Positions 19,001-62,443 of a DNA stretch of 64,000 nt are shown in pieces. Source of the stretch: Perkinsela sp. CCAP 1560/9 (Eukaryota; Protista; Euglenozoa: Kinetoplastea); assembly GCA_965644495.1 (NCBI GenBank), contig CBFFSA010000013.1:358001-422000 (forward strand). Direction: 5' to 3'. The position numbers were made by a program, and so were the translations under genes. The first letter of the stretch is position 1, and each line of letters begins with the position of its first letter. The notes under the pieces were generated by a model. That model saw only the letters and a list, made by a program, of their open reading frames with translations, did no database searches and was not told where the DNA came from.

Positions 19001-20760
19001 GCAGTCCTCCATGCGTATGAATGGAACATATGCCCGCTTAGCTCCTCAGCTCGTTCACAAGTTCAACGCCCGAAACGGTATGGAGGTTTTGGTCTCCGAT
19101 CTGCATCTGCGCACCGCTCAGCGGCGTACGTGTCTTCAGTTGCTTTTGCTGCAGAGACGGATCGTTGGCTACCGTCAGATGCAGAAGGATTCTCTTCTGC
19201 AGTCCTGGACATCAATCGCCGGAGCGGAGGCCCCGTAGTTGATCCGGACACGGGAAGAGCATTAGAGGAGATCATCTCCCCTTTTCCGAAAGGATCTAGT
19301 CAAAGTACAGAAACGGACAATTCTTGCACCCCCCGTCAACGTGCCTTGAGCGACGCAATCTCGGCGCACGAATTTTCATGTGCGTACGCAGCGGCGGACA
19401 GTAGCACTCGCGCGAGGTGCACCTCTCAGACTGGAGATGGGGCCAGCAGCTGGGCATTTTGCATCCCATCAACAGAGCTTGGCCACGCTTACACACCCAC
19501 AGAATTCCGCGCCCTCTCCAGGTGGTGGTTAGGTGCCAAGGTCTACAACGAGTTGAGCACGTGCCCAATTAACACATGCCAACAACCTCTCGACCTCGAA
19601 GGAAACCATGCAGTGTCTTGCAAAAGTGGGAATGGACTGATCTCCCGCCACAATGCGCTCATTACACAATTCACCGACACGTGCTCCAAGGCGAATTTAT
19701 CACCTTCACGTGAGGTAAGCCTGGGGAACCTAGGGCCTGGCGTCTGTCCCACGAGGCCGGGCGATGTCTTTATTCCGGGCTATGAGAAAGCTCAAGGTCT
19801 GGTGCTTGATTTTGCTGTCACCCACGTTCAGCAACCTAAATACACGGACTTAGTCCGCAACGCTAACGGGGTGGCGGCAGGATCATTTGCGGAGCACTAC
19901 GCCGCTTCTCACAAGGTGAAAGAGAGAGAGGAGGCGGAACAAGCAAAACATGTATTTGTTGCCATGGTGGTAGAATCATATGGTGCTTGGAGTGCAAGTG
20001 CCCTATCAATCCTTAGATGGGTGGGGAAGCATCGCGCCTCATGCTCCCAGGGGGCTCTATCTCAAGAAGCAGCTACCCGTCAGCTGCTTCAAGAGCTTAA
20101 CCTCACCCTGATGCGTTCTCAATCGAGAATGCTTGTCTCACGCATGCCGGCTGAAGATCCACAACCGGCACTTATTTTGCAGTAGCCTAAACCAAGGCTC
20201 GCGGATCCCGGCATGTTCGAAGGCTGAGGGTGCTGGTCGCGTCGACAGAGTCTACTCACGCCTAGTCCGTCAGGGCTAGGTACCCCAAGTGAGGTAGTAC
20301 ACGGGTAGTGAATCTCCTCCCCGTCGGCCAGCATCCTGTTTCGCGACCGTGTCGCTGTCGGCACAGACCCTTTGCTTGCGCCCTCTCGTACAACAAGAGA
20401 AGGGTTCACAAGGCAAGCTGGGAGAGGTCGAAAGACCCGGTCCGGAACGCGCGAATGGTTAGGTGAAAGCCCCCCCTAGCAGAGGGAGATCTTACCCTCC
20501 CTGGAAAGTTGGAAAGATTGGTAAGGGCAAGTGGGTAAGATGGGAAAGCAGATTTGTTAGTTCTATATTTAAAAAAAAAAAGGGGGTAAGGACGGGGATG
20601 GATGAGAGGGTTAAGGGAAAGTGTGGAAAGTGGGGAGTAAGTACGGTGAAGTGGGGAGAGTAAGTACGGTGAAGTGTGAAAAGTGTGCGAAAGTGTTCGA
20701 AAAGTAGATAAAAACGTTAAACTCAATACTATTCCCCCCCCAAAAAAAAATACAAAAAAA
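19001..20760 (+). mobile_element. 5'-truncated family-A CRE-like element (thumb, zinc finger and RLE; stop at 20185)
   Basis: GGFGLRS, CP..C..H...C, RHN, TRPGD and LDFAVTH motifs; module at 20228-20458; purine-rich UTR and poly(A). Confidence 0.9.
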
Positions 20761-20838
20761 AACGATAAAGATACAGTTTTAACGATAAAGATACAGTTTC
20801 TGTACCTTGTTGTTTCTGTACCTTGTTGTACCTTGTTG
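20761..20838 (+). other. Stacked spliced-leader-like exon copies
   Basis: Partial SL, then full aacgataaagatacagtttctgtaccttgttg (20781-20812), then tttctgtaccttgttg, then taccttgttg. It shares the euglenozoan SL core ACAGTTTCTGTAC..TTG. Confidence 0.85.
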
Positions 20839-23800
20839 ATTTATTTCCTAATCCTCTCCAAATGGTCGCGTTGACTCGCTCCGTAGCCATACGCTCGGGC
20901 CAACACATTGAAACTCCACCCTTACCTTTGTGCCACGGACATAAGAACCGCCCCCTGAAGGATTCCTTGCTTCCAAACCCCCACGACGCAAAAACTTCCC
21001 CGACGGATTCACCGGTAAAAATTTCTGATCTCCCTCGCGAAGATTCCACTAATCTTTGCAAACACATATGTAAAAACAAACTGGCATGCAAACACAGTTG
21101 TTGCAAGCGCACAGTGGAGGCGCCTATTGACAGTTCCCATCACATACATACAGTTTGCATACGTACTGGTGACGACCGTCTTCTTCATACTAAAGTACAC
21201 TAGCGTTATTGTAGGGAACGTCCTCGCCCTAGGATGCACGGTGACTTGGACAGTCGCATGCCTGGTCGGGAGCATTATATTGAAAACGCGTAGTCTGCTT
21301 TCACTTCGTTCCAAGGACGTTGCCGCACCAGGTCATGACCCCCCTGTGACGCTAAACCTCTGCACACGTAAACGAAATTGTGTCTCACCGCAACCTGCTC
21401 CCCCCACCTCGTTCTCTATTACCTTGAGCAATCCTCCTAGCTTTGAGTTATCGATTCCTGTATCCCCAACCGACGAGACTGACTCAACTCAGGAGACCGT
21501 ACTATGCGACCCTCACCGCGCTGTGACTCTAGCTGGTCCTGCAACGGAAGCTGTCGTGCCACCTCTTCATTCTGCGGGGGACCCGCCCCTCCCGGAACGT
21601 CGGTACTGTCCGGCAGACGGATGTGCGTGGTCCGCACAATCCCACGGCGGCAAATGGCAAGCTTTTTATAATCATGTGGCCTCCCGACACGCCGAAGGCA
21701 TACCGCTAGAGTGATGGGCACGTGAAGGCAGATTTCTTTGCACGGTGTGCAACAAACATTTTGTGTTGACCAAGAAGGAAGCCCATTCAATTCAATGCTA
21801 CGGGGCGGACCCACCTCCCACACAGCCATCACCAACAACAGATCTTCCTGACCCCGCGTACCCTTCAGAGACGCCAGAGGAATCTAGCTTACCGCCCACT
21901 ATAGACCCACCATGTTTCCCTAGCCTAAGAGCCGTCTGTACAACACCTATGACCACGTCCAAAGACGTTCCTTTCCGATGCCGACGCCAGTGGGCTTCGG
22001 TCCTAACAGCCACCGTCGCAACAGCCGAGAGGGAGAACACCGTCGCTGCATGGACACGACTAGCGATGCTTCCGAAATGTGTCCTTCCAGCCCCGCATAG
22101 AAGAGGACGAAAGGGAAATAGCTCGTACGCCTCCCACGTGCGGAAATGTCTGGATCGCTGGGAAGCACACGAATATTCAGCCCTGTGGAAAGAAGCTGTA
22201 CTTGAACACCAGAAGAAGAGGAAGCAAGGATCCGGAGCAGGTACACTACTGGATGAGGAAAAGAAAGCGATTCGCTCCGAACTACTGGTCCGTCAAGGAG
22301 AAGTTTCTCGAGGAATAGCTGCACTCACTTCGGCGCCAATGGCACCCGACAATGAGGAGACATATAACAAACTAGTCACCAAGCACCCGAGCCGGCTGTT
22401 CGGTCCACTACGCCAAAGCGCACCGTCCTCCAACGAAATCATTTCCTTGACTGTCAATGAGGATGATGTACGAAAGGCGATCCAAAGCTTTAACAGGGGC
22501 TCCTCAGGTGGAACCATGGCGCTACGAGCGGAACACATACAAGCGGCATTATTCGCTGGAACTGACACGGATGTTCATCCCCTCGAGAGTCTCACAAAGC
22601 TTGCCAATCACCTACTCGCCGGTAAGGCTCCAGTTGAAGCACAACAATATTACGCAGGGGCTCGATTGTGTGCATTGCAGAAAGGGCAAAATGATGTAAG
22701 ACCTATCGCAGCAGGGGAAACGTTGCGCCGCATGGTCAGCAAGGCTGCCTGCTCTGTTGTAAAGTCCAAAGCTAGCACACTTTTCCAAGGACGTCAATAT
22801 GGTGTGGCAACGGCATCTGGCTCCGAAAGGGTTATCCACCTCTGCCGCCAAGTGGTGGAGTCCACAAAGAATGACCCAGAATTTGTCTTATGCAAGGTGG
22901 ACCTTCGTAACGCATTCAATACGGTTTCCAGGGCGGCGTTCATATCCCTATCAGAAAAGCACTTCCCCGAGTTGACTCCTTGGATAAATTGGTGCTACGC
23001 CACCGATAGCGCACTCACATATGGTTCTCAAACAGTTGCCTCCACCGAAGGAGTTCAACAGGGGGACCCTTTAGGGCCCCTCCTTTTCTCCATGGTTCTG
23101 CGAGAGATTACTGAACTGATCGAGAATGAAGTGCCCAGCGGACTCCTCTTGCACCTTTGGTATCTCGATGACGGTGTTTTAGCCGGAAAATCCGACAGCG
23201 TACGGAGGGCGTTGGATGCTATAGCATGTGCGGGACCTCAGTGGGGGCTCCATCTTAATGCGAGTAAATGCGAGATAATATCTCATCCGGTATCCTCGCG
23301 TTGCACGGACTCATTCACTACCATCCCAGCCAGAATGAAAAATCACGAAGGAAACTTTAGCATCTTGGGTAGCCCAGTAGGGTCAGAAGAGTTCTGTATT
23401 GAATACCTACGTGAGTTTGCGATCGAACCTGCGGAAGCAACTCTAAAGGCGATAGGCATACTAGAAGACCCACAGGTAGCCCTCGCGCTAATTCGCTACT
23501 GCTCTGGCTTTTGCCAATTAGTCTACTCCCTCCGCACAACGCCACCAAAATACATGGTAGACCTCTGTCAGAGGCTTGATAACGCCGTGCTCCGCGCTAC
23601 GGAGCTTATACTCTGTCCTCTAGACGCCCCGGCACTAGCACAAATCCAACGCGACAAGAGACATGGTGGTTTTGGCCTAAGATCCTCCGTTATACATTCA
23701 TCTGCAGCTTATGTCTCTCCAGCAGCCTTTGCGGGTTCTCAAGATGACTGGGCACCGTCAGAGACGAAATGGTTTTCCGAGGCAGTGGAGCGTGTTAACC

Positions 23801-24903
23801 GCCAGGCGGGAAAGACTTTGGTGGATTCGACAACCGGCAAAATACAGGAGGCACTAATCCACAAAGATTATAACGCATCAACCAACCCTCTCAATGCACA
23901 CCATGATCACAGCCTAGATGCCGGGATGAATGAAAAGCTGATTATCCCGCGACAGAAACACCTTTGTCGCGAGATAGGCGACCGGGAATTTTCTTCAGCA
24001 TATGAGGCAGCAGACTGCAACACACGCGCACGTTTGATTTCGCAAACTGGGAGAGGGGCCGCGAGTTGGGCATTCGTTATTCCCTCCAAGGAGAGAGGAT
24101 ACTCTTACACTCCTACTGAGTTTCGCGCCTTGTCCCGCTGGTGGTTGGGAGCAGACATTTACCCCGGAACGCGGCCCTGTCCTATGGGGAGCTGTCAGCA
24201 ACCGTTGGGACCAAAAGGCGACCATGCCGTGTCCTGTAAGTGTGGACATGGCATCATGACGCGCCACAACGCGATGGCGTGTCAATTTGTCGATTTCTGC
24301 AGTAAGGCGCACCTCGCCCCCCAACGGGAGGTAAGTCTTGGCAATCGCGGTCCCGCTGGAGCGCCCACGAGGCCTGGTGATGTCGTTTTGCCCAGCATTG
24401 GCTTAGGCAAGTCTCTGGTGCTTGATTTCGCCGTTACCCACGTTCAGCAACCCAAATACGCGGACCTCGTCCGTAACGCTAACGGGGTGACGGCGGGATC
24501 ATTCGCCGAGAGCTATGCCACAAGCCATAAGCAGGTGCAGCGACGGGACGCCGAGACTGCTGGGCACGACTTCGCGGCCATGGTCGTAGGCTCCTATGGC
24601 TCGTGGTCCGACAGCGCCCTCGCTGTGCTTAAGAAGGTTGGAGCGTGGCGCTCTGCTACGTCCCAAGGGACGATGGACAGGGGAAAGGCGACGGCAAATC
24701 TCATCCGTGACTTGAATGTCACTTTAATGCGAGCTCAGGCTCGTATGATGGTGGCGCGGATGGCAGAAGATGACCCGGATCCACCTCTGCTCCTGAATTA
24801 GAGGGTGATGCACTTTTTTTTCTTTTTCTTTTCTTTGGCTTGGTTTCGTCAAATAGAGTGATTTGTTGTAGATTGATTTATAGAGATAAATTTGAAAAAA
24901 AAA
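20781..24903 (+). mobile_element. Full-length SL-capped family-A CRE-like element, inactivated
   Basis: ATG at 20862 (MVALTRS); zinc fingers; RT (RPIAAGE, DLRNAFN, GVQQGDPLGP, WYLDD); RLE; stop at 24801. One early frameshift and a TGG>TGA stop at 21712 where paralogs have WW. Confidence 0.92.
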
Positions 24904-27057: not shown

Positions 27058-30000
27058 TTTAACGATAAAGATACAGTTTCTGTACCTTGTTGACTATATT
27101 TTATCTCATATTTTTCCCGGGTACACGGCTACCTTAATATCCGGAGACCACCACTTTGAAGAGTCAACTCGAATGGAAGAAGATTCGTTCCTGCAAGAAG
27201 AAGCAGCGCACCAACCAGGATCCTGGGACCAAATTGCGGGGAATGCTCACCTAATCAAACAGCCCACCTCATATAACGAATTGCTATACACCACACCGAT
27301 CCCGGAAAGCATCCCTGAAGACTGGTGTCAGAAAGCCACCTTAATTTCGACTGACCAGCAAACACCAGACACTGGACACAGAAATGACGGCGACGAGGAA
27401 ACGACCCACGCACGCGTTCTCATCAGCACAAATCACAGCTCACGAACAACACAACCCACTAATGTTTCAGTTTCGAAAAAATTTTCCCGTCGCAAGTCAC
27501 CGGCCACATCTCCGTGTGCTAAAGGACAAATTCGGGGCATTGGGAAATCTCAGAAGACGCGACAGAAAACCAACACAAGAACAATGGAAGCGATCGACCA
27601 TAGTATCCCACATAGTCCATACGATAGCGACCTTCCGGAGACTATATCACAAACAACGACCCTCGAAACCCCAACGCCGACAGGTGACGAAACCACTACG
27701 AACATACCGAGCTCTCAAGAAGGCCCTAGGCAACGGGAGTGTCCCGCAGAAAACTGTAATTGGAAAGCACACGCCCACGGAGGGCAATGGCAATCGTATT
27801 ATAGCCATGTGGCTTATCGACACGGAGGGAGCATTCCCAGCATCTGGTGGGATAACGAAGGACGCTTCTTGTGCAACGAATGTGGACGGCATTATGCGTC
27901 CAGCAAGAAGACATCACACGAGAATCAATGCAAAGGACAATCTGTGCAGCCAGCTTCTTCCCCGCACCCATCAGAACCCCTAGGGGAAACTTTTTACGAC
28001 GTTCACGGCACCAACGATATACCATCATTGGACGAAATATGCACGACTTCAATCAGCACCTGTAAGGACGTCCCGCATCGATGCCGATATTTGTGGACCA
28101 AAATTTTGACTACAGCCCTTTCCTCCGCGGTGCACGAAAATTCAGTAAGGGCGTGGACGCTCCTGGCAATACTCCCGAAATGCGTTCTACCAGCCCCTTA
28201 CCGCGGCGGTCGCAAAGCTCACACGTCATATTCCTCGTATATTCTCAAGCGAATGGAGCTTTGGATTGAAGGAAAATACGCAACCTTATGGTCCGAAGCG
28301 ATTAGGGACAACGAAAGGAAACGTTCGAAGCAACAGAGCAATGAGAATGTGGAGGATAAATCTCAGATACGATCAGAACTTTTGGTCCGTCAGGGAGAAT
28401 ATTCGAGAGGCATGGCCGCCCTTACTGCAGCGCCACTTGCGCCGTACAATGAGGAAACTCTGCAAAAGCTACAAAAAAAGCACCCCAGTCCTCACGCAAA
28501 CCCTATATCCAGTCCCCTACCTCCTTTGCAAGTGGATGTTTTGCAGCTCGACGAATCTGAGGTCAAAAAGGCAGTCAATAGTTTCCACCGTGGGTCCTCT
28601 GCTGGAACCATGGGGCTTAGACCTGAACACCTCCAAACAGCACTTCAGGAGCACGTTGACCACAACATGGACCCTCTCATGACACTCACTTCCTTTGTGA
28701 ATCACCTGCTAGCTGGCAAAGCTCCAGACGAAGTACACCCCTTCTTTGCTGGTGCACGGCTCTGCGCTCTCGAAAAGGGGAATGATGACGTGCGACCTAT
28801 AGCTGCAGGAGAAACCCTTCGACGTCTCGTAAGCAAGGCAGTGTGTCTCTCAATTAAACAAAAAGCAGGTTCCTTTTTCGGACGCAAACAGTATGGGGTT
28901 GCAGCGGCTGCTGGAGCAGAACGGGTAATCCACCTTTGCCGCCGGCTAATGCGGAACAACATGGAGAACGACAACATCACCTTTTGCAAAGTGGACCTCA
29001 GGAACGCCTTCAACAACGTAAGTAGGCCGGTTTTTATTTTCCTGACACGCGAACATTTTCCTGAAATATCGCCATGGGTCGAATGGTGCTACGGAAACCA
29101 CAGCTGTCTCACGTTCGGTGACGATTTCATTCCTTCGGCGGAAGGCGTGCAACAAGGGGATCCGTTAGGCCCTCTTCTCTTCTCTTTGGCCCTAGCAGAG
29201 GTAACGAAGGAAATAGCGTCCCGCTCTCACTTACGAACACAGTTGTGGTATCTCGACGACGGCATACTTGTAGGCGAACCGAGTGAAGTCCGGAAGGCCC
29301 TAGACATCCTCGATGAGATAGGGCCGAAGTGCGGGCTTTTCCTAAACCTCACCAAGTGTGAGATTATTACTCCTCCAGCTTCAGCCCACACCTCCGTTTT
29401 CTTCCCCGATATCCCGAGCGAGAAAATCCGCTACGATGGGAACTTCGACACCCTTGGAAGCCCCATTGGCTCTGCGGAGCACTGTATGGAATTCCTAGAG
29501 ACACACGCGATTGAGCCAGCCCGGGATACATTGGAAGCTACCGCAGTGTTAGAAGACCCGCAAGTGGCCCTCGCGCTAATACGGCAATGTGCAGGATTTT
29601 GTCAAATGGTATATGCACTACGCACAACCCCACCACAACCCCACCACAAGCCGTCAAGGAATTATGCCAACGGCTTGATTCATATTTGCTCAACGCTGTG
29701 GAACATGCAATTTCCCACCTGGACCTCTCCGCTCGCGACCAAATCCAACGACCGAAACGCCACGGGGGGTTCGGACTCCGCTCATCATTGCTCCACCAGT
29801 CAGCTGCATATGTTTCCTCGGTTAAACTGAACCAATATTCGCAAATTTATGAATTTTCAAAATTTCACGTCCCTTATATGCGCTGAGGCCATGAGGGAAT
29901 CCAGCCATTGACGCAATTTAATCACCGTTTTTTCGCTTACCTCCGTTTCCGCCACTGAAGACACATGGCGCCCACCCCTACAGTACAAAACGATGTACAT

Positions 30001-32057: not shown

Positions 32058-35000
32058 GGTTAACGATAAAGATACAGTTTCTGTACCTTGTTGAATTATT
32101 TTCCTTATTTCATCTTTTTCCAGGTACGCGGTTCCTTCCATGACCAGCCAAAAGTCTTTCCAAGAAGAAAAAAAAAGGCACACACTTGGTTCCTGGGATC
32201 AATTCGAGGGTAACAAACATTTAATATCCGGCCCCAGCACCTACAACGAACTTGCCTACACCACCGAGATCCCTGCGCACGTTCCATCCGAATGGACCAG
32301 ACGAACGGAAGCAGCATGTGCCACTTTGGTTGTCGAGGGGGGGACGCCCGACATGGGAATCGAATTAGGGGAGTGTGAAGAGTCAAACCACGCCAGCGTT
32401 CAGCGACAACCTCCCGATAGTTCCTCAGTTCGCCGTTTTCCAAAGACACCCAGAAAAACGAATAGGATGTCACAGGACTCCATCGTTCTCCGAGGGGAGC
32501 TAAAAGGATACAGAAAAACGCCAGTTGGCCGACGAGCCCCCGAGAAACATAACTCTAATGGTAGAAAACCGGCACCTGATAAGGAAGTTCTACCTGCAAT
32601 GGATCTTGATGAAGCATGTTTGACACAGCCATCCGCAACTCAAACACAATCAGCCGCCGCCGAACCACCGAATCACTCTCCCTCTCACGATGAAGCTGTA
32701 CCTTATTTCCAATCATCACAACAACGAAGAGCCTGCCCAGCACCCGGCTGCAATTGGGACGCGCCATCACACGGTGGAAGTTGGCAAGCATACTTCAACC
32801 ACATTGCCTCGCAACATGGAGACAGTGTTCCGGATTCATGGTGGAGAGAAGAAGGCCGTTTCCGATGCCACACATGCAATCGCCACTACGACTTAGGGAA
32901 AGAACACTCACACTCGAAGAGCTGTAAAATCGCATCTCACATCCCTTGCCAAGAGGAGGTGAACCCACAAGCTGTAAACCCGACACAAGAGAACGACGTC
33001 ATCGAATATCTTCCAACATTGGCCGAGATTAGTGCTCTCCCTCGCGCAACTTGCAAGGATATTCCTCACCGGTGTCGGCTACAGTGGGCACGTGTCCTCA
33101 CGACTACCCTTAAGGAGGCCCTGGGTAGCACTGGTGTAGGAGGATGGGCTAAGCTCGCAATGCTCCCAAAGTGCACCCTAGCAGCACCCCGAAGGGGCGG
33201 GCGCAAAGGGCACATGTCTTACGCGTCACATGTAAGTAACTGCCTCGAACGCTGGGAGATGGGAGACGTCTCCGGCCTCTGGAAAAAACTAATTGTTGAA
33301 CAAGAGAAAAGGTCGCCTCGCAAAGAACCTGACGAGCATTCACTTGAGGAAGAGATGCGAAAGGCCAACCTACGCGCCGAGCTTTTAGTTCGACAAGGCG
33401 AATTTTCACGGGGATTGGCAGCACTTACTGCGGATCCTCTCGCACCAGATAACGACGACACTCTTTCCCAGCTCCTGCTTAAACACCCCACCCGTCACAC
33501 CACTGAGCCGCCCGTAGATATGCCTCCCCTAGGCCCGGAGGTGCTTACACTCGGAGAAACGGATGTACGACACGCACTAAAAGGTTTTCACCGAGGATCA
33601 TCCAGCGGGACTGTGGGGCTGCGGGCAGAACACCTTCAAGCTGCACTACTCGTCAATGAAGATCTCGACGTCACACCGCTCTCTGCACTAACAGCTCTCA
33701 CGAATCATCTCCTCGAAGGCAAAGCCCCGTTGGACGTGCAAGAAGCGTTTGCTGGCGCGCGGCTGTGTGCACTCAGAAAAGGGGAGAGTGGTGTACGACC
33801 GATAGCTGCCGGGGAGACATTACGCCGTTTGACTAGCAAAGCAGCATGTCTAGCAGTACGAACGAAGGCACGTGAACTTTTCGCCGGAACACAATTTGGG
33901 GTAGCCACACCTGCTGGAGCTGAGCGTCTAATTCACCTTTGTCGAAAAGCAATGCACGAAAATTCTGAGAACTCCGATTTCGTCCTCTGTAAAGTAGATC
34001 TGAAGAACGCGTTCAACAATGTTTCTCGTGCCGCCTTCATTGCGTTGACACGACATTACTTTCCAGAGCTTTCACGCTGGGTGGAGTGGTGCTACGGTAC
34101 TACAAGTGCTCTGACCTATGGCCAAATCCGAATTTCATCCGAGGAAGGCGCGCAACAAGGCGACCCCTTAGGGCCACTACTTTTTTCCCTCGTCATGCTC
34201 CAAGTTTCGGAAGAAATTAAAACTTCGTCCGGAGGACTTCAGCTCCACATGTGGTACCTTGACGACGGAGTCTTGGCAGGTCCATCATACGAAGTACAAA
34301 ATGCTCTGCGCGTGATAGCGGACGTGGGGCCTAAGTGTTTCTCAACCCGGAGAAGTGCGAAATTATCACCCACCCTGCTTCAGCAATGCAGACAGACATT
34401 TTTTATCAAATCCCTCGCGAACAAAAGAATTTCCAAGGCAATTTTTCTATTCTTGGGAGCCCCATAGGTTCTTCCGAATTTTGTCGTACCTACCTAGAGG
34501 AACATGCAATCGACCCCGCTGTAGACACTCTCCTGGCAATACAAAGCCTAGAAGACCCACAAGTTGCCCTTTCGCTACTTCGTCAATGTGCCGGATTTTG
34601 CCAAATGACGTATGCACTGCGTACAACACCTTTTCGTAAACTCATGGACTTATGCACTCGCCTTGACTCAGCAACAATGAAAACTCTCGAATGGATTTTC
34701 TGTCCTTTGGATGATGTTTCCAGGTGTCAGGCACAGCGACTGAAGAAACATGGGGGATTTGGCATTCGTTCATCCGAGCTACATGCCTCCGGGGCTTATA
34801 TTTCTTCAGTGACATTCGGCGCCGAGCAAGACTCCTGGGAACCGCAAGAAGCAGAAGGTTTCGAAGATGCAGTTCATGACTTCAACAACGCACTAGGCAT
34901 CACGTTACTTGACCGGACCACAGGATCTATCACCAACAGCCAACAAGATAATCGCCAAACGAGTAACGACATCGAGGCGGATTTACCGGAAGGAACCTAT

Positions 35001-59849: not shown

Positions 59850-61698
59850 AAGATGTTGTTTTCGAAGGATTGAATTACGCCATTTGTGAAAGCGCATATG
59901 ATACGTATAGTGGATAAAAATAAGATATTGAGCGTTGAAAATCAAAAAAAAAAAAAAAAAACGAAGACGAGGGAGACGTAAACTTCATGCAATCAATAAC
60001 CAAGCAGAACGGACATGTGAGCGATTTTGATGTGTATGAGGAATGAGTGAGTGAGGAGACGAGATGACGAGGGGGGGGCTCTCAGATAGTAGGCAATCTG
60101 GGGTCTCTTCTTCTTGCCGTCACTAGCGTTTGGGTGATTTGAAGACTGGCGAGTGGGTGGTCCCCGCCGGGGAACTACCCATTCGCAAGAGAGAGAAAGT
60201 TTGAATATTGTTTTGTGGACGTCCATATATTTTTTGTTATCATTATAGTCAGGATAGGAAAGTTGAAAGACATGTAGTTATTTAGTTTTATTTACTTGAT
60301 GAATATTATTTACTTAGGACAATTCTTTATATATTTTGTACAAAGATTTTATGATGAGCAATTCTAAAACGTTCCAAAGAAGCGAATTATCATCTACTCT
60401 CGACAAACAATTATGTAAACCCGTACTTATTTCATCAAACACTCAAGATGAGATTAGCTATTGGACTGCCTAATGCTTCAAGTACAATCTCTTGCCCAGG
60501 CTGTGGGATCAGTGAATCGCCGATTGGTATAATTCCTCATGTCGCCGGATGCTCGAAATGTGCCGGAATGAATTGCACAAGAAAGCACTCACACATTGTG
60601 AGATACCTATCAAATCTGTGCGGGAAAGCAGGCCTACCATGTGCCGTGGAACCGCGTCTGTATTCCTCGTTTTTCTGCACAAAGTGCAAGTGCTCCATAT
60701 CACCAGCAGCAGCAGAGAGGCACCCATGCCGAGCTCGTCGTATACGATCTGGCCCAGATCTGGCGATAATGTGGCCAGATATTGGAGAAGTTCTATATGA
60801 TGTCACAGTTGTCCACACACTATGCAGCAGTTACCAGAAACAGACCAGCAAAGCCCTGTTAGAGAGTGCCGTAGAAAGAAAACATCGGAAATACGTTGTA
60901 GAGAAGGGATTAGAACCAGAGTATTTTCGTTGCGTCGCTTTAACGGATTGTGGAATGTTACATGAAGATACCAAGGTCTTGATCAAAGCCCTTGCAAAAC
61001 GAGCGGATTCTGACCCAAAAGTTATACGTGAAGCTTGTCAATTGGAAAATGAAAAGTTTGCGGCTTACACTATCGTATCGCAATTGCGGAACCACATGCA
61101 GGGTGAAAAATGGCTAGGTGGCATAAGCCTTTGAAGCCAAGTAATCTTCTAGTCTCCAAAGTCAAGTCTATCTCGTATTATTCAACATGGGCACAAATAC
61201 AGGACCCAACAACAACAACATGGGCACAGATACAGGACACTAAACTCTGAGGGCTATTAAAAGGACAAAATTCCTTTTTGCTTAAGAAAGAAAGGTATTT
61301 TCTTTAGAAAAGGATTTTCTTTAGAAATGGATTTTTATATGATGAAAATCCATATGAAAAGTGGGTAGGCTTCCGGTGGGCCTAGGGGGGTGCACACCCA
61401 AAAAGAAAAAAAAATCTTCGTATAAATATACATCATCATCATACGATAATGAGAACTTGTGAAAGTAATTGAAGCATTTATATGTAGAATAAGAAGTATG
61501 CATGCTGATCGAAAAAATTATTGACCACCTATTCCACAGAACTGGGCGGGTCACGAAGACTTTTTCAAGCGTAAAAAAAAAAATTGACTTGGTTTGGGTT
61601 TGCTCGGTTTGGTTGGGCTTTTATTAGTTTACGATTTGAAATTTAAAAAAAAAAAACTCAATACTATTCCCCCCCCCCCAAAAAAAAAAAAACGTTTT

Positions 61699-62443
61699 AA
61701 CGATAAAGATACATTTTCTGTACCTTGTTGCCTTTTCTTCCATACACCATCTCCTCTACAATGGGAGGGCACCCCCCTCAATCACACTCTCTCTTGTCCG
61801 CACCCCCCCTCCGTCTCTCGTCCCATCACCCTCCTGCATCGTATTCCCCCACTTCGTCCTTCCCTCTCAGCGCGCTTGTCGTTCTGCTGTTTTCCTCTCT
61901 TGCGTCCCCCACCCCCGTGCCAGCAGCCCAAAGTATTGTATACTTGCTCACGGGATGGGGGCAGAGGTCCAGACCGATGGGCTCGTGCGTCGTTTCTCCT
62001 TGTCCCCGCGTCCGTTCCGCCTCGTCTCTCTTCCCGCTTTTTGCCCTCGGCGTGACGGCGGCTATGCGTTTCGTCATCTCCACGTCTCCCACCCTCGTAC
62101 GGCAACCTAAAGTATCTGATACTGCTAACGGGGTGGGAGCGGAGGTCACCTCCACGTCTCCCACCCTCGTACAGCAACACAAAGTATCTTATACTGCTAA
62201 CGGGGTGGGAGCGGAGGTCCTGGACCACATGGGCCACAGTGCGGACGAGTCGGTCAGTAGGGACGAGTCAGTCGGAAGGGAGTAAGTGGGGGAAGGGAAG
62301 TGAATGTAGTGAGGGGAAGGAAGTAGGGGAAGGAAGGAAGGAAGGAAGTAGGGTGAAGGGTTTTAAGTGGTGGAAAGTTCGAAACGTACATAAAAACATT
62401 AGACTCAATACTACTCCCCCCAATTATATGCAAAAAAAAAAAA
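61699..62443 (+). mobile_element. SL-capped, poly(A)-tailed non-autonomous derivative of family A
   Basis: SL with one mismatch at 61699-61730. A duplicated ~60-bp unit encodes QQHKV..TANGVGA, like the RLE segment QQPKY..NANGVAA. The 3' end actcaatactactcccccc-A(n) matches 20722-20760. Confidence 0.75.

What the first reader, a model, noticed from the sequence alone, without database searches (positions are those of the whole stretch)
20761..20838. Stacked SL relics record successive splice and retroposition cycles
Seen: a full SL is followed by TTTCTGTACCTTGTTG and then TACCTTGTTG. The first relic starts exactly after the AG of ATACAG. Known: dinoflagellate retrogenes show tandem relict SLs truncated at an SL-internal AG. 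Inference: the integrated SL provides the next trans-splice acceptor, so the element regenerates its own acceptor each cycle, and this copy went through at least two and possibly three cycles. The second relic would need a TG acceptor or slippage. The upstream partial SL may be an RT re-priming artefact.
Basis: partly seen in the sequence, partly recalled or inferred. Interest (0 to 1): 0.82.

Follow-up and report, generated by a model that had tools for sequence, protein, structure and literature searches.

The report
Stacked spliced-leader relics heading a retrotransposon
An R2-like jumping gene in a kinetoplastid-like protist begins with a copy of the cell's spliced leader followed by two shortened copies of it; such stacks are real and recurrent in this genome, but only a minority start after an AG, so they are not a simple count of splice-and-copy cycles.

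Summary
Window 20761-20838 holds a 19-nt piece of the 38-nt spliced leader (SL nt 7-25), a near-complete SL (nt 4-38), a 16-nt relic (nt 23-38, directly after the SL's CAG) and a 10-nt relic (nt 29-38, after CUG). An R2-like retrotransposon body follows. A paralogous locus on another contig carries the same head.

The genome has about 740 SL heads and about 49 stack loci with 58 distinct junctions. Relic starts are far from random, but the main class is the 10-nt relic after UG (27 junctions). AG-compatible relics number 7 (16 nt) plus 1 (22 nt).

For re-splicing: the added unit almost always ends exactly at SL nt 38, no relic exceeds 22 nt, and SINE heads with the same sequence almost never stack. 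Against a self-renewing acceptor: most heads, including 5 of 9 copies of this family, carry one SL. The upstream partial SL is best read as slippage between the SL's two T-runs (8 loci).

A single-event stuttering reverse transcriptase is not excluded. Public reads could not span the stack. Other agents of this scan already noted SL-headed elements in this genome. The stack census is new here.

The parts
20722..20760 (+). 3' end and A-rich tail of the preceding element (C-run, A9, TAC, A7). It is the insertion site of the stack-bearing copy.
   Evidence: The same tail motif precedes the SL head at 61660-61690. Other copies of the family also sit behind A-runs.
20761..20779 (+). Partial SL, nt 7-25. 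It is cut on its 3' side and joined to the next piece over a run of four T.
   Evidence: The class 'SL 5' part ending at CAG(T)n + near-full SL' occurs at 8 distinct loci. The SL has TTT at nt 4-6 and at nt 23-25.
20778..20812 (+). Near-complete SL copy, nt 4-38 (35-nt exact match).
   Evidence: upstream unit length 35 for the paralog L010.
20813..20828 (+). Relic 1: SL nt 23-38 (16 nt), starting directly after the position of the SL-internal CAG.
   Evidence: 7 distinct loci carry this junction.
20829..20838 (+). Relic 2: SL nt 29-38 (10 nt), starting after CUG. This is the commonest relic class in the genome.
   Evidence: 27 distinct junctions.
20839..20861 (+). Pyrimidine-rich, AG-free leader of the element up to the first ATG (20862).
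   Evidence: across heads, the median first AG is 37 nt after the SL, against 12 in shuffles.
21745..24801 (+). Reverse-transcriptase ORF of the element (1018 aa). A 195-aa ORF lies upstream at 21127-21714.
   Evidence: Pfam RVT_1 E=1.6e-18. The best solved relatives are R2 proteins, 8gh6 E=2.8e-11.
27058..27092 (+). Single SL head (nt 4-38) of the next element in the array, for comparison.
32060..32093 (+). Single SL head (nt 5-38) of a further element.
61691..61730 (+). SL head with a small 5' duplication (AACG + T-run + SL from nt 4) and a G22-to-T change.

Best explanation
The stretch is the 5' head of one copy of an R2-like non-LTR retrotransposon that was copied into DNA from SL-carrying RNA. 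Most likely the two relics are what remains of earlier SL heads. A genomic copy that already began with an SL was transcribed, and a new complete SL exon was trans-spliced into that resident head. The product was then reverse-transcribed and inserted. The 16-nt relic marks splicing at the SL's own CAG (nt 20-22). The 10-nt relic marks use of the G at nt 28, a non-canonical UG site that lies directly behind the only pyrimidine run of the SL (UUUCU, nt 23-27). The extra 19-nt piece upstream is a separate event: a polymerase slip between the two T-runs of the SL. Re-splicing into a resident head is a rare side path (about 7% of heads), not the way the family normally renews itself. Shown: the anatomy, the genome-wide classes, the exact end of the added unit and the upper limit of relic length. 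Inferred: that splicing rather than the reverse transcriptase made the junctions, and that a DNA copy lay between the steps.
For: (1) In searches that did not fix the end of the upstream unit, that unit ends at SL nt 38 in nearly all stacks. The 7-nt duplication, which has better microhomology (TGT), occurs at only one locus, L050, against 27 junctions for the 10-nt relic. Adding a whole exon is what trans-splicing does. (2) Relic starts are sharply clustered: 27 after G28, 7 after AG22, 1 after AG16 and 2 after A30, among 39 junctions without a spacer. The excess at AG sites has P=0.004 and the excess at nt 29 has P=3e-31. (3) There is no relic longer than 22 nt and no SL followed within 30 nt by a near-full SL (0 matches). 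Splicing predicts this, since the first AG is at nt 15-16 and upstream lies a poly-A tail. End-to-end template jumping from the RNA 5' end does not predict it. (4) About 105 SINE copies carry the same SL 3' part, but most begin at SL nt 10-11 and so look inherited rather than re-spliced. Only 1 of them has a stack, against about 48 of about 635 other heads (P=0.009). (5) Stacks arose repeatedly. The same families carry different heads (single SL, SL+8, SL+16+10; L063 versus L068). (6) No SL RNA gene with a duplicated exon exists in the assembly. (7) In T. brucei, minor trans-splice sites are non-AG in about 25% of cases (PMC2936537).
Against: The dominant relic needs a UG acceptor, which I could not test with RNA. 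The two SL-internal AGs have no pyrimidine tract upstream. In stacks the 5'-most unit is severely truncated far more often than in single heads (30 of 49 against 31 of 160, manual tallies; P=7e-8). Several loci show untidy stutter (L004, L014, L018, L050). About a third of junctions carry 1-17 extra nucleotides. This same head also carries a slippage-type duplication. All of this fits an error-prone reverse transcriptase. No parent-daughter pair was found. No copy has the SL joined at the first canonical AG downstream of the leader in two families. Inner relics are not more diverged than outer units, because almost all are perfect.
Confidence: 0.4

Rival explanations
1. Single-event stutter. 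While copying one SL-carrying RNA, the R2-like reverse transcriptase repeatedly stalled inside the SL, fell back and recopied its 3' end (10 nt, then 16 nt, then the 19-nt piece). The stack would then record one retrotransposition, not several.
For: Each junction has microhomology: TG for the 10-nt relic, G for the 16-nt and 22-nt relics, and a T-run for the upstream piece. The T-run class occurs at 8 loci, and one of them duplicates flanking DNA too. Untidy repeats occur at L004, L014, L018 and L050. Spacers of 1-2 nt look like untemplated additions. Truncated 5'-most units are enriched in stacks. Relic frequency falls with length: 27, 7, 1, 0. In this head, piece length grows towards the 5' end. 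R2 reverse transcriptase is known for template jumping (reference list of PMC2881922), and this RT's closest solved relatives are R2 proteins.
Against: Slippage by microhomology should favour the 7-nt duplication (3-nt match), yet that occurs at one locus against 27 junctions. The recopied unit ends at nt 38 almost always. SINE heads with the same sequence, presumably copied by the same enzymes, have 1 stack in about 105. No full tandem SL exists.
Confidence: 0.28
2. RNA-level double splicing. A second SL exon is spliced into the SL of an already spliced mRNA, or into another SL RNA that then serves as donor. The stack would exist in one RNA generation, with no DNA copy in between.
For: It explains the exact nt-38 end, the limit of 22 nt and the lack of stacks in SINEs as well as the main reading does. 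It needs no resident genomic parent, and none was found.
Against: There is no RNA evidence, and I know of no report of tandem SLs on kinetoplastid mRNAs (own knowledge). It needs the same UG site. No SL RNA gene carries a duplicated exon, although that would not be required.
Confidence: 0.12
3. DNA-level tandem duplication (replication slippage) after insertion.
For: Some duplications include flanking, non-SL DNA or body sequence (L006, L057 and L106), so DNA-level events do occur.
Against: The same 10-nt duplication arose at about 27 junctions in unrelated families but at none of about 105 SINE heads with the same sequence. The unit boundaries coincide with the exon end.
Confidence: 0.08
4. 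Assembly artefact in a low-complexity repeat.
For: Public short-read contigs do not span 20732-20804.
Against: The same head was assembled at two paralogous loci with different flank lengths. A contig from an independent run covers the 10-nt relic and the body junction. About 49 other loci show the same precise classes.
Confidence: 0.02

Closest known systems
Tandem DinoSL relics of dinoflagellate retrogenes (Slamovits and Keeling 2008, as reviewed in PMC6050394)
   Same: A full SL is followed by 5'-truncated SL copies at the 5' end of retroposed sequences, and this is read as repeated splice-and-retropose cycles. Here the 16-nt and 22-nt relics start after the SL-internal AGs in the same way.
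   Different: Here the carriers are retrotransposons of a kinetoplastid-like organism, not cellular genes. There are several relic classes, and the main one follows UG. Stacks are a minority (about 7% of heads). Relics are all undiverged, so the 'older relic is more mutated' argument is not available.
Template jumping and variable 5' junctions of R2 and other non-LTR retrotransposons
   Same: The RT is R2-like. Junctions show microhomology, extra nucleotides, stutter and duplications of the 5' end. R2 5' junctions vary when second-strand priming relies on chance microhomology (PMC3774820).
   Different: The added unit here is nearly always a complete SL ending at nt 38, and the best microhomology is not the one used. 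Full end-to-end tandem SLs are absent.
SL-gene-specific retrotransposons (SLACS, CZAR, CRE1/2 of trypanosomatids; NeSL-1 of nematodes); from my own knowledge, not tested against their sequences
   Same: They are restriction-like-endonuclease-type non-LTR elements linked with the spliced leader.
   Different: Those elements sit inside SL RNA genes and are flanked by SL gene sequence. Here the SL is at the element's own 5' end, behind poly-A tails of other elements, and no SL intron follows the SL heads.
U6-L1 chimeric retrocopies of mammals (own knowledge)
   Same: A small abundant RNA is fused to the 5' end of a retrocopy by the retrotransposon's RT.
   Different: That route needs an RNA ending at the fusion point. 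The only SL species ending at nt 38 is the transient free exon. The absence of SL + near-full SL argues against jumps from the RNA 5' end.

Membership tests
Dinoflagellate-type SL recycling (relic stacks) | A full SL followed in tandem by 5'-truncated SL copies at the 5' end of a retrocopy | tested here: met
   genome-wide.
Dinoflagellate-type SL recycling (relic stacks) | Relics begin directly after an SL-internal AG | tested here: not met
   Met for relic 1 here and for 8 of 39 clean junctions. Not met for relic 2 here or for the 27 junctions of the main class, which follow UG.
Dinoflagellate-type SL recycling (relic stacks) | Inner (older) relics are more diverged than outer ones | tested here: inconclusive
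   With up to 3 mismatches allowed, almost all stacks are perfect: one locus has changes in the inner relic and two have changes in the outer unit.
Dinoflagellate-type SL recycling (relic stacks) | Transcripts carry the tandem SLs, and a new SL is seen joined inside a genomic SL | not testable with these tools
   No RNA run held the stretch. Only contigs were available, and the single read-laying run was used.
RT stutter / template switching artefact | Junctions sit at the best available microhomology | tested here: not met
   The 3-nt option (7-nt duplication) occurs at one locus, the 2-nt option at 27 junctions. The criterion is met for the upstream partial SL (T-run).
RT stutter / template switching artefact | It occurs on any template with the same sequence copied by the same enzymes | tested here: not met
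   1 stack in about 105 SINE heads against about 48 in about 635 other heads. That SINEs use the same RT is an inference.
SL-gene-targeting CRE/NeSL-type insertion | The element is inserted inside an SL RNA gene, with SL gene flanks on both sides | tested here: not met
   Upstream of the SL heads are poly-A tails or unique DNA, and the SL is followed by the element leader, not the intron. True SL RNA genes lie elsewhere.
R2-like (restriction-like endonuclease) non-LTR retrotransposon | RT domain closest to R2 | tested here: met
   RVT_1. The top solved-structure matches are all R2 proteins.
R2-like (restriction-like endonuclease) non-LTR retrotransposon | C-terminal restriction-like endonuclease domain | not tested
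   Pfam gave only RVT_1. I did not examine the C-terminal motifs.

The most novel reading that the evidence does not exclude
Resident SL heads of retrotransposons are re-spliced in vivo, mostly at a UG that sits behind the SL's own UUUCU run. The stacks would then be true generation marks of element lineages, and would reveal AG-independent trans-splice acceptor choice in a kinetoplastid-like organism.
Probability: 0.3. Interest if true: 0.7.

Novelty: new variant of a known kind. Interest (0 to 1): 0.5.

Why it matters
If the relics are splice products, each stack marks a genomic retrotransposon copy that was itself a source of new copies. That would allow element lineages to be ordered without a molecular clock. 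It would also show that the trans-splicing machinery can use the SL's own sequence, including a non-AG site, as an acceptor. If they are stutter products, they instead give a natural record of how an R2-like reverse transcriptase behaves at the heavily used 5' end of its template. Either way the census shows that the dinoflagellate rule ('relic starts after AG, count the relics to count the cycles') cannot be carried over unchanged. I found no paper holding this SL sequence or describing SL relic stacks in kinetoplastids. That covers only the held library.

Tried and rejected
(1) Hidden AG masters. I asked whether resident heads with a T-to-A change would turn UUUCUG into UUUCAG. There is no such copy. 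AG directly before SL nt 29 occurs only 9 times, none preceded by the SL's T-run, and none of the single loci has a body that matches a 10-nt stack.

(2) A recombinase-type element ending in AG that integrates at nt 28/29 and so supplies an acceptor. The candidate repeat has only 4 copies, and the 10-mer is internal to it.

(3) A variant SL RNA gene with a duplicated exon end. None was found. The 7 SL-plus-intron copies that could match are all canonical, and no stack is followed by the intron.

(4) Re-splicing at the first canonical AG downstream of the leader. There are 0 copies in two families.

(5) Parent-daughter pairs for stacks with spacers.

(6) An HDV-like ribozyme or any other Rfam family at the element 5' ends. 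Nothing was found.

(7) Reads. Only short-read contigs were available. They break in the repeat, and no RNA holder was found.

(8) A divergence asymmetry between inner and outer units. There is no power, because the stacks are nearly all perfect.

Full report
WHAT IS THERE. To number it I looked for the real SL. Two tandem SL RNA genes on contig C1 (L034/L035) give a 38-nt exon followed by a GTATGAG intron. Five more SL-plus-intron copies, one of them variant, lie elsewhere. The exon resembles kinetoplastid and diplonemid leaders (own knowledge). On this numbering the window reads as follows:
- 20761-20779 = SL nt 7-25
- 20778-20812 = SL nt 4-38
- 20813-20828 = SL nt 23-38
- 20829-20838 = SL nt 29-38
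- from 20839, a pyrimidine-rich leader, with an ATG at 20862

The body is a non-LTR retrotransposon. It has an RVT_1 ORF at 21745-24801, and its closest solved relatives are R2 proteins. It lies in a head-to-tail array of five related elements between about 16.8 and 43 kb. Three further SL heads in the window are single.

IS IT REAL. SL matches in the window are far above chance. The same four-piece head is present at C2:1477478-1477552, inside a segmental duplicate more than 10 kb long whose A-runs differ slightly. Public runs (one study, plus one possible RNA run) were available only as short-read contigs. These break in the repeat 20732-20804. One contig covers 20818-20964, that is the 10-nt relic and the body junction, and no RNA holder was found.

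GENOME-WIDE CENSUS. The 10-mer of SL nt 29-38 occurs 853 times, against 50 for the reversed control. That is roughly 740 heads once second units are subtracted. A pattern for two SL 3' ends within 30 nt gave 61 matches with 0 controls. I fetched them all. They reduce to 49 distinct contexts and 58 distinct junctions:

| Junction class | Relic | Distinct junctions |
|---|---|---|
| After UG28 | 10 nt | 27 |
| After AG22 | 16 nt | 7, plus 1 starting at G22 itself |
| After AG16 | 22 nt | 1 |
| After A30 | 8 nt | 2 |
| 1-17 extra nucleotides between the units | various | about 20 |

Allowing three mismatches adds very few loci, so the stacks are young. Against a uniform model, AG sites are enriched (8 of 39 clean junctions, P=0.004). 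The peak at nt 29 is overwhelming (P=3e-31). Starts are not random and AG sites are hit, but the main site is not an AG.

WHAT SPEAKS FOR SPLICING.
- First, I repeated the search without fixing where the upstream unit ends. It still ends at nt 38 in nearly every case. A slip from nt 27-29 to nt 34-36 has a 3-nt match and would give a 7-nt duplication. That form occurs at one locus (L050), whereas the 2-nt option that restores a complete exon end accounts for 27 junctions.
- Second, there is no relic longer than 22 nt, and no SL followed within 30 nt by a near-full SL. The first AG of the SL is at nt 15-16, and the heads mostly sit behind poly-A tails that contain no AG. End-to-end template jumping from the RNA 5' end, the classic R2 behaviour, would give exactly the full tandem SLs that are missing.
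- Third, a SINE-like family of about 105 copies carries the same SL 3' part followed by GTAC. Its heads mostly begin at nt 10-11 and look inherited. It has one stack, against about 48 in the other heads (P=0.009).
- Fourth, the events are recurrent. The nine 97-99% identical copies of this family have five single heads, this stack (two paralogs) and an SL+8 head (two tandem copies). Another family shows no relic, a 10-nt relic and a 16-nt relic on the same body.
- Fifth, no SL RNA gene has a duplicated exon.

WHAT SPEAKS FOR THE REVERSE TRANSCRIPTASE.
- The upstream partial SL cannot be a splice product, because it ends at nt 22-25, not at nt 38. The same arrangement occurs at 8 distinct loci. 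The joint lies in a T-run, and the SL has TTT at both nt 4-6 and nt 23-25. One of these duplications includes flanking DNA (L106).
- Several stacks are untidy (L004, L014, L018, L050).
- A third of junctions have extra nucleotides.
- The 5'-most unit of stacks is cut at nt 22 or later in 30 of 49 loci, against 31 of 160 single heads. These are my manual tallies (P=7e-8). Part of this comes from particular families. In one family, 9 of 12 copies begin at nt 23/24 with no SL upstream.
- All three main relic starts follow a G, their frequency falls with length (27, 7, 1, 0), and in this head the pieces grow towards the 5' end. A repeatedly stalling enzyme would also produce that.

THE 10-NT RELIC. 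I tried to rescue an AG for it. There are no resident heads with UUUCAG, and AG directly before nt 29 occurs only 9 times. Four of these are copies of one repeat in which the 10-mer is internal. What remains is a UG acceptor or stutter. In favour of UG, nt 28 lies directly behind the only pyrimidine run of the SL. The two AGs lie upstream of that run. The leaders that follow are AG-poor (median first AG at 37 nt against 12 in shuffles) and 66% pyrimidine. In T. brucei, minor trans-splice sites lack AG in about a quarter of cases, although the authors warn that strain differences may explain many of them (PMC2936537). This step is inference.

DOES THE ELEMENT RENEW ITS ACCEPTOR EACH CYCLE. No. 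If the internal CAG were the regular acceptor, every generation would add 16 nt. Yet about 93% of heads are single, no full SL + 16 + 16 exists, and the one 16+16 locus lacks an upstream SL (L058). How single-SL copies give single-SL daughters remains open. I found no SL-less master in this family, no copies spliced at the first downstream AG, and no ribozyme match.

COMPARISON AND VERDICT. The nearest known case is the tandem DinoSL relics of dinoflagellate retrogenes (PMC6050394). The present case differs in host, in carrier (retrotransposons), in having several relic classes and in the non-AG main class. The held library contains neither this SL sequence nor a report of SL relic stacks in kinetoplastids. 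Other agents of this scan had already noted SL-headed elements in this genome, and one stated that some were 'spliced and copied more than once'. The census of junction classes is new here.

I rate the readings as follows:
- re-splicing of a resident head, plus one slippage event: 0.40
- single-event stutter: 0.28
- RNA-level double splicing: 0.12
- DNA slippage: 0.08
- assembly artefact: 0.02
- something not considered: the remainder

LIMITS. Counts rest on exact-match patterns and on lists capped at 100 rows. The two tallies of head truncation were made by eye.

Noticed in passing
G000:C1:661309-661650 (L034/L035); also C2:801586, C20:10941, C25:23932, C49:34383: SL RNA genes with a 38-nt exon and a GTATGAG intron. 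Only about six intact copies are in the assembly: two in tandem 297 nt apart, the rest dispersed. A variant or pseudogene lies at C1:410099. That is few for a trans-splicing organism, so arrays may be collapsed.
   Followed up: partly
L031, L032, L036-L042 (e.g. G000:C1:393079-393115): A SINE-like family of about 105 copies. Its head is SL nt 10/11-38 followed directly by GTAC and a conserved structured-looking body. UACC (nt 29-32) and the following GGUA can pair across the junction, as in the SL RNA itself. Its SL part looks inherited rather than re-added.
   Followed up: partly
L104-L115 (e.g. G000:C30:60887-61025): A LINE family in which 9 of 12 nearly identical copies begin at SL nt 23/24 with unique DNA upstream. 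Between head and leader lie variable short pieces (TG, TTG, TGTTG, CTTGTTG). This suggests an RNA 5' end or an RT stop at the position right after the internal CAG.
   Followed up: partly
window 21110-21112: This copy lacks about 141 nt that the eight other copies of the family, including its C2 paralog, carry. A short-read contig shows 144 letters there.
   Followed up: no
window 16.9-32.1 kb versus G000:C2:1473609-1488630: A segmental duplication of more than 10 kb of the element array, shared between contigs C13 and C2.
   Followed up: no
G000 loci listed (e.g. C1:1473691, C1:3234102, window 61717-61751): One family has three different leader starts behind the SL: 15 copies with 12 extra nt, 5 without, and 1 with 2 extra. 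The shorter starts are not preceded by AG in the longer form, so the SL-body joint is not always explained by an AG acceptor in a known copy.
   Followed up: no
L092-L095, L100-L103 (G000:C7:5312, C8:663568, C40:21010, C52:45727): A four-copy repeat contains SL nt 28-38 internally, preceded by AAGAG. In one copy an inverted SL 3' end follows 127 nt downstream. It may belong to the recombinase-type element that another agent linked to SL relics.
   Followed up: partly
41 distinct SL heads in the fetched loci and the window: Leaders behind the SL are 66% pyrimidine and depleted of AG. In 23 of 41 there is no AG before the first ATG.
   Followed up: partly
   Followed up: no
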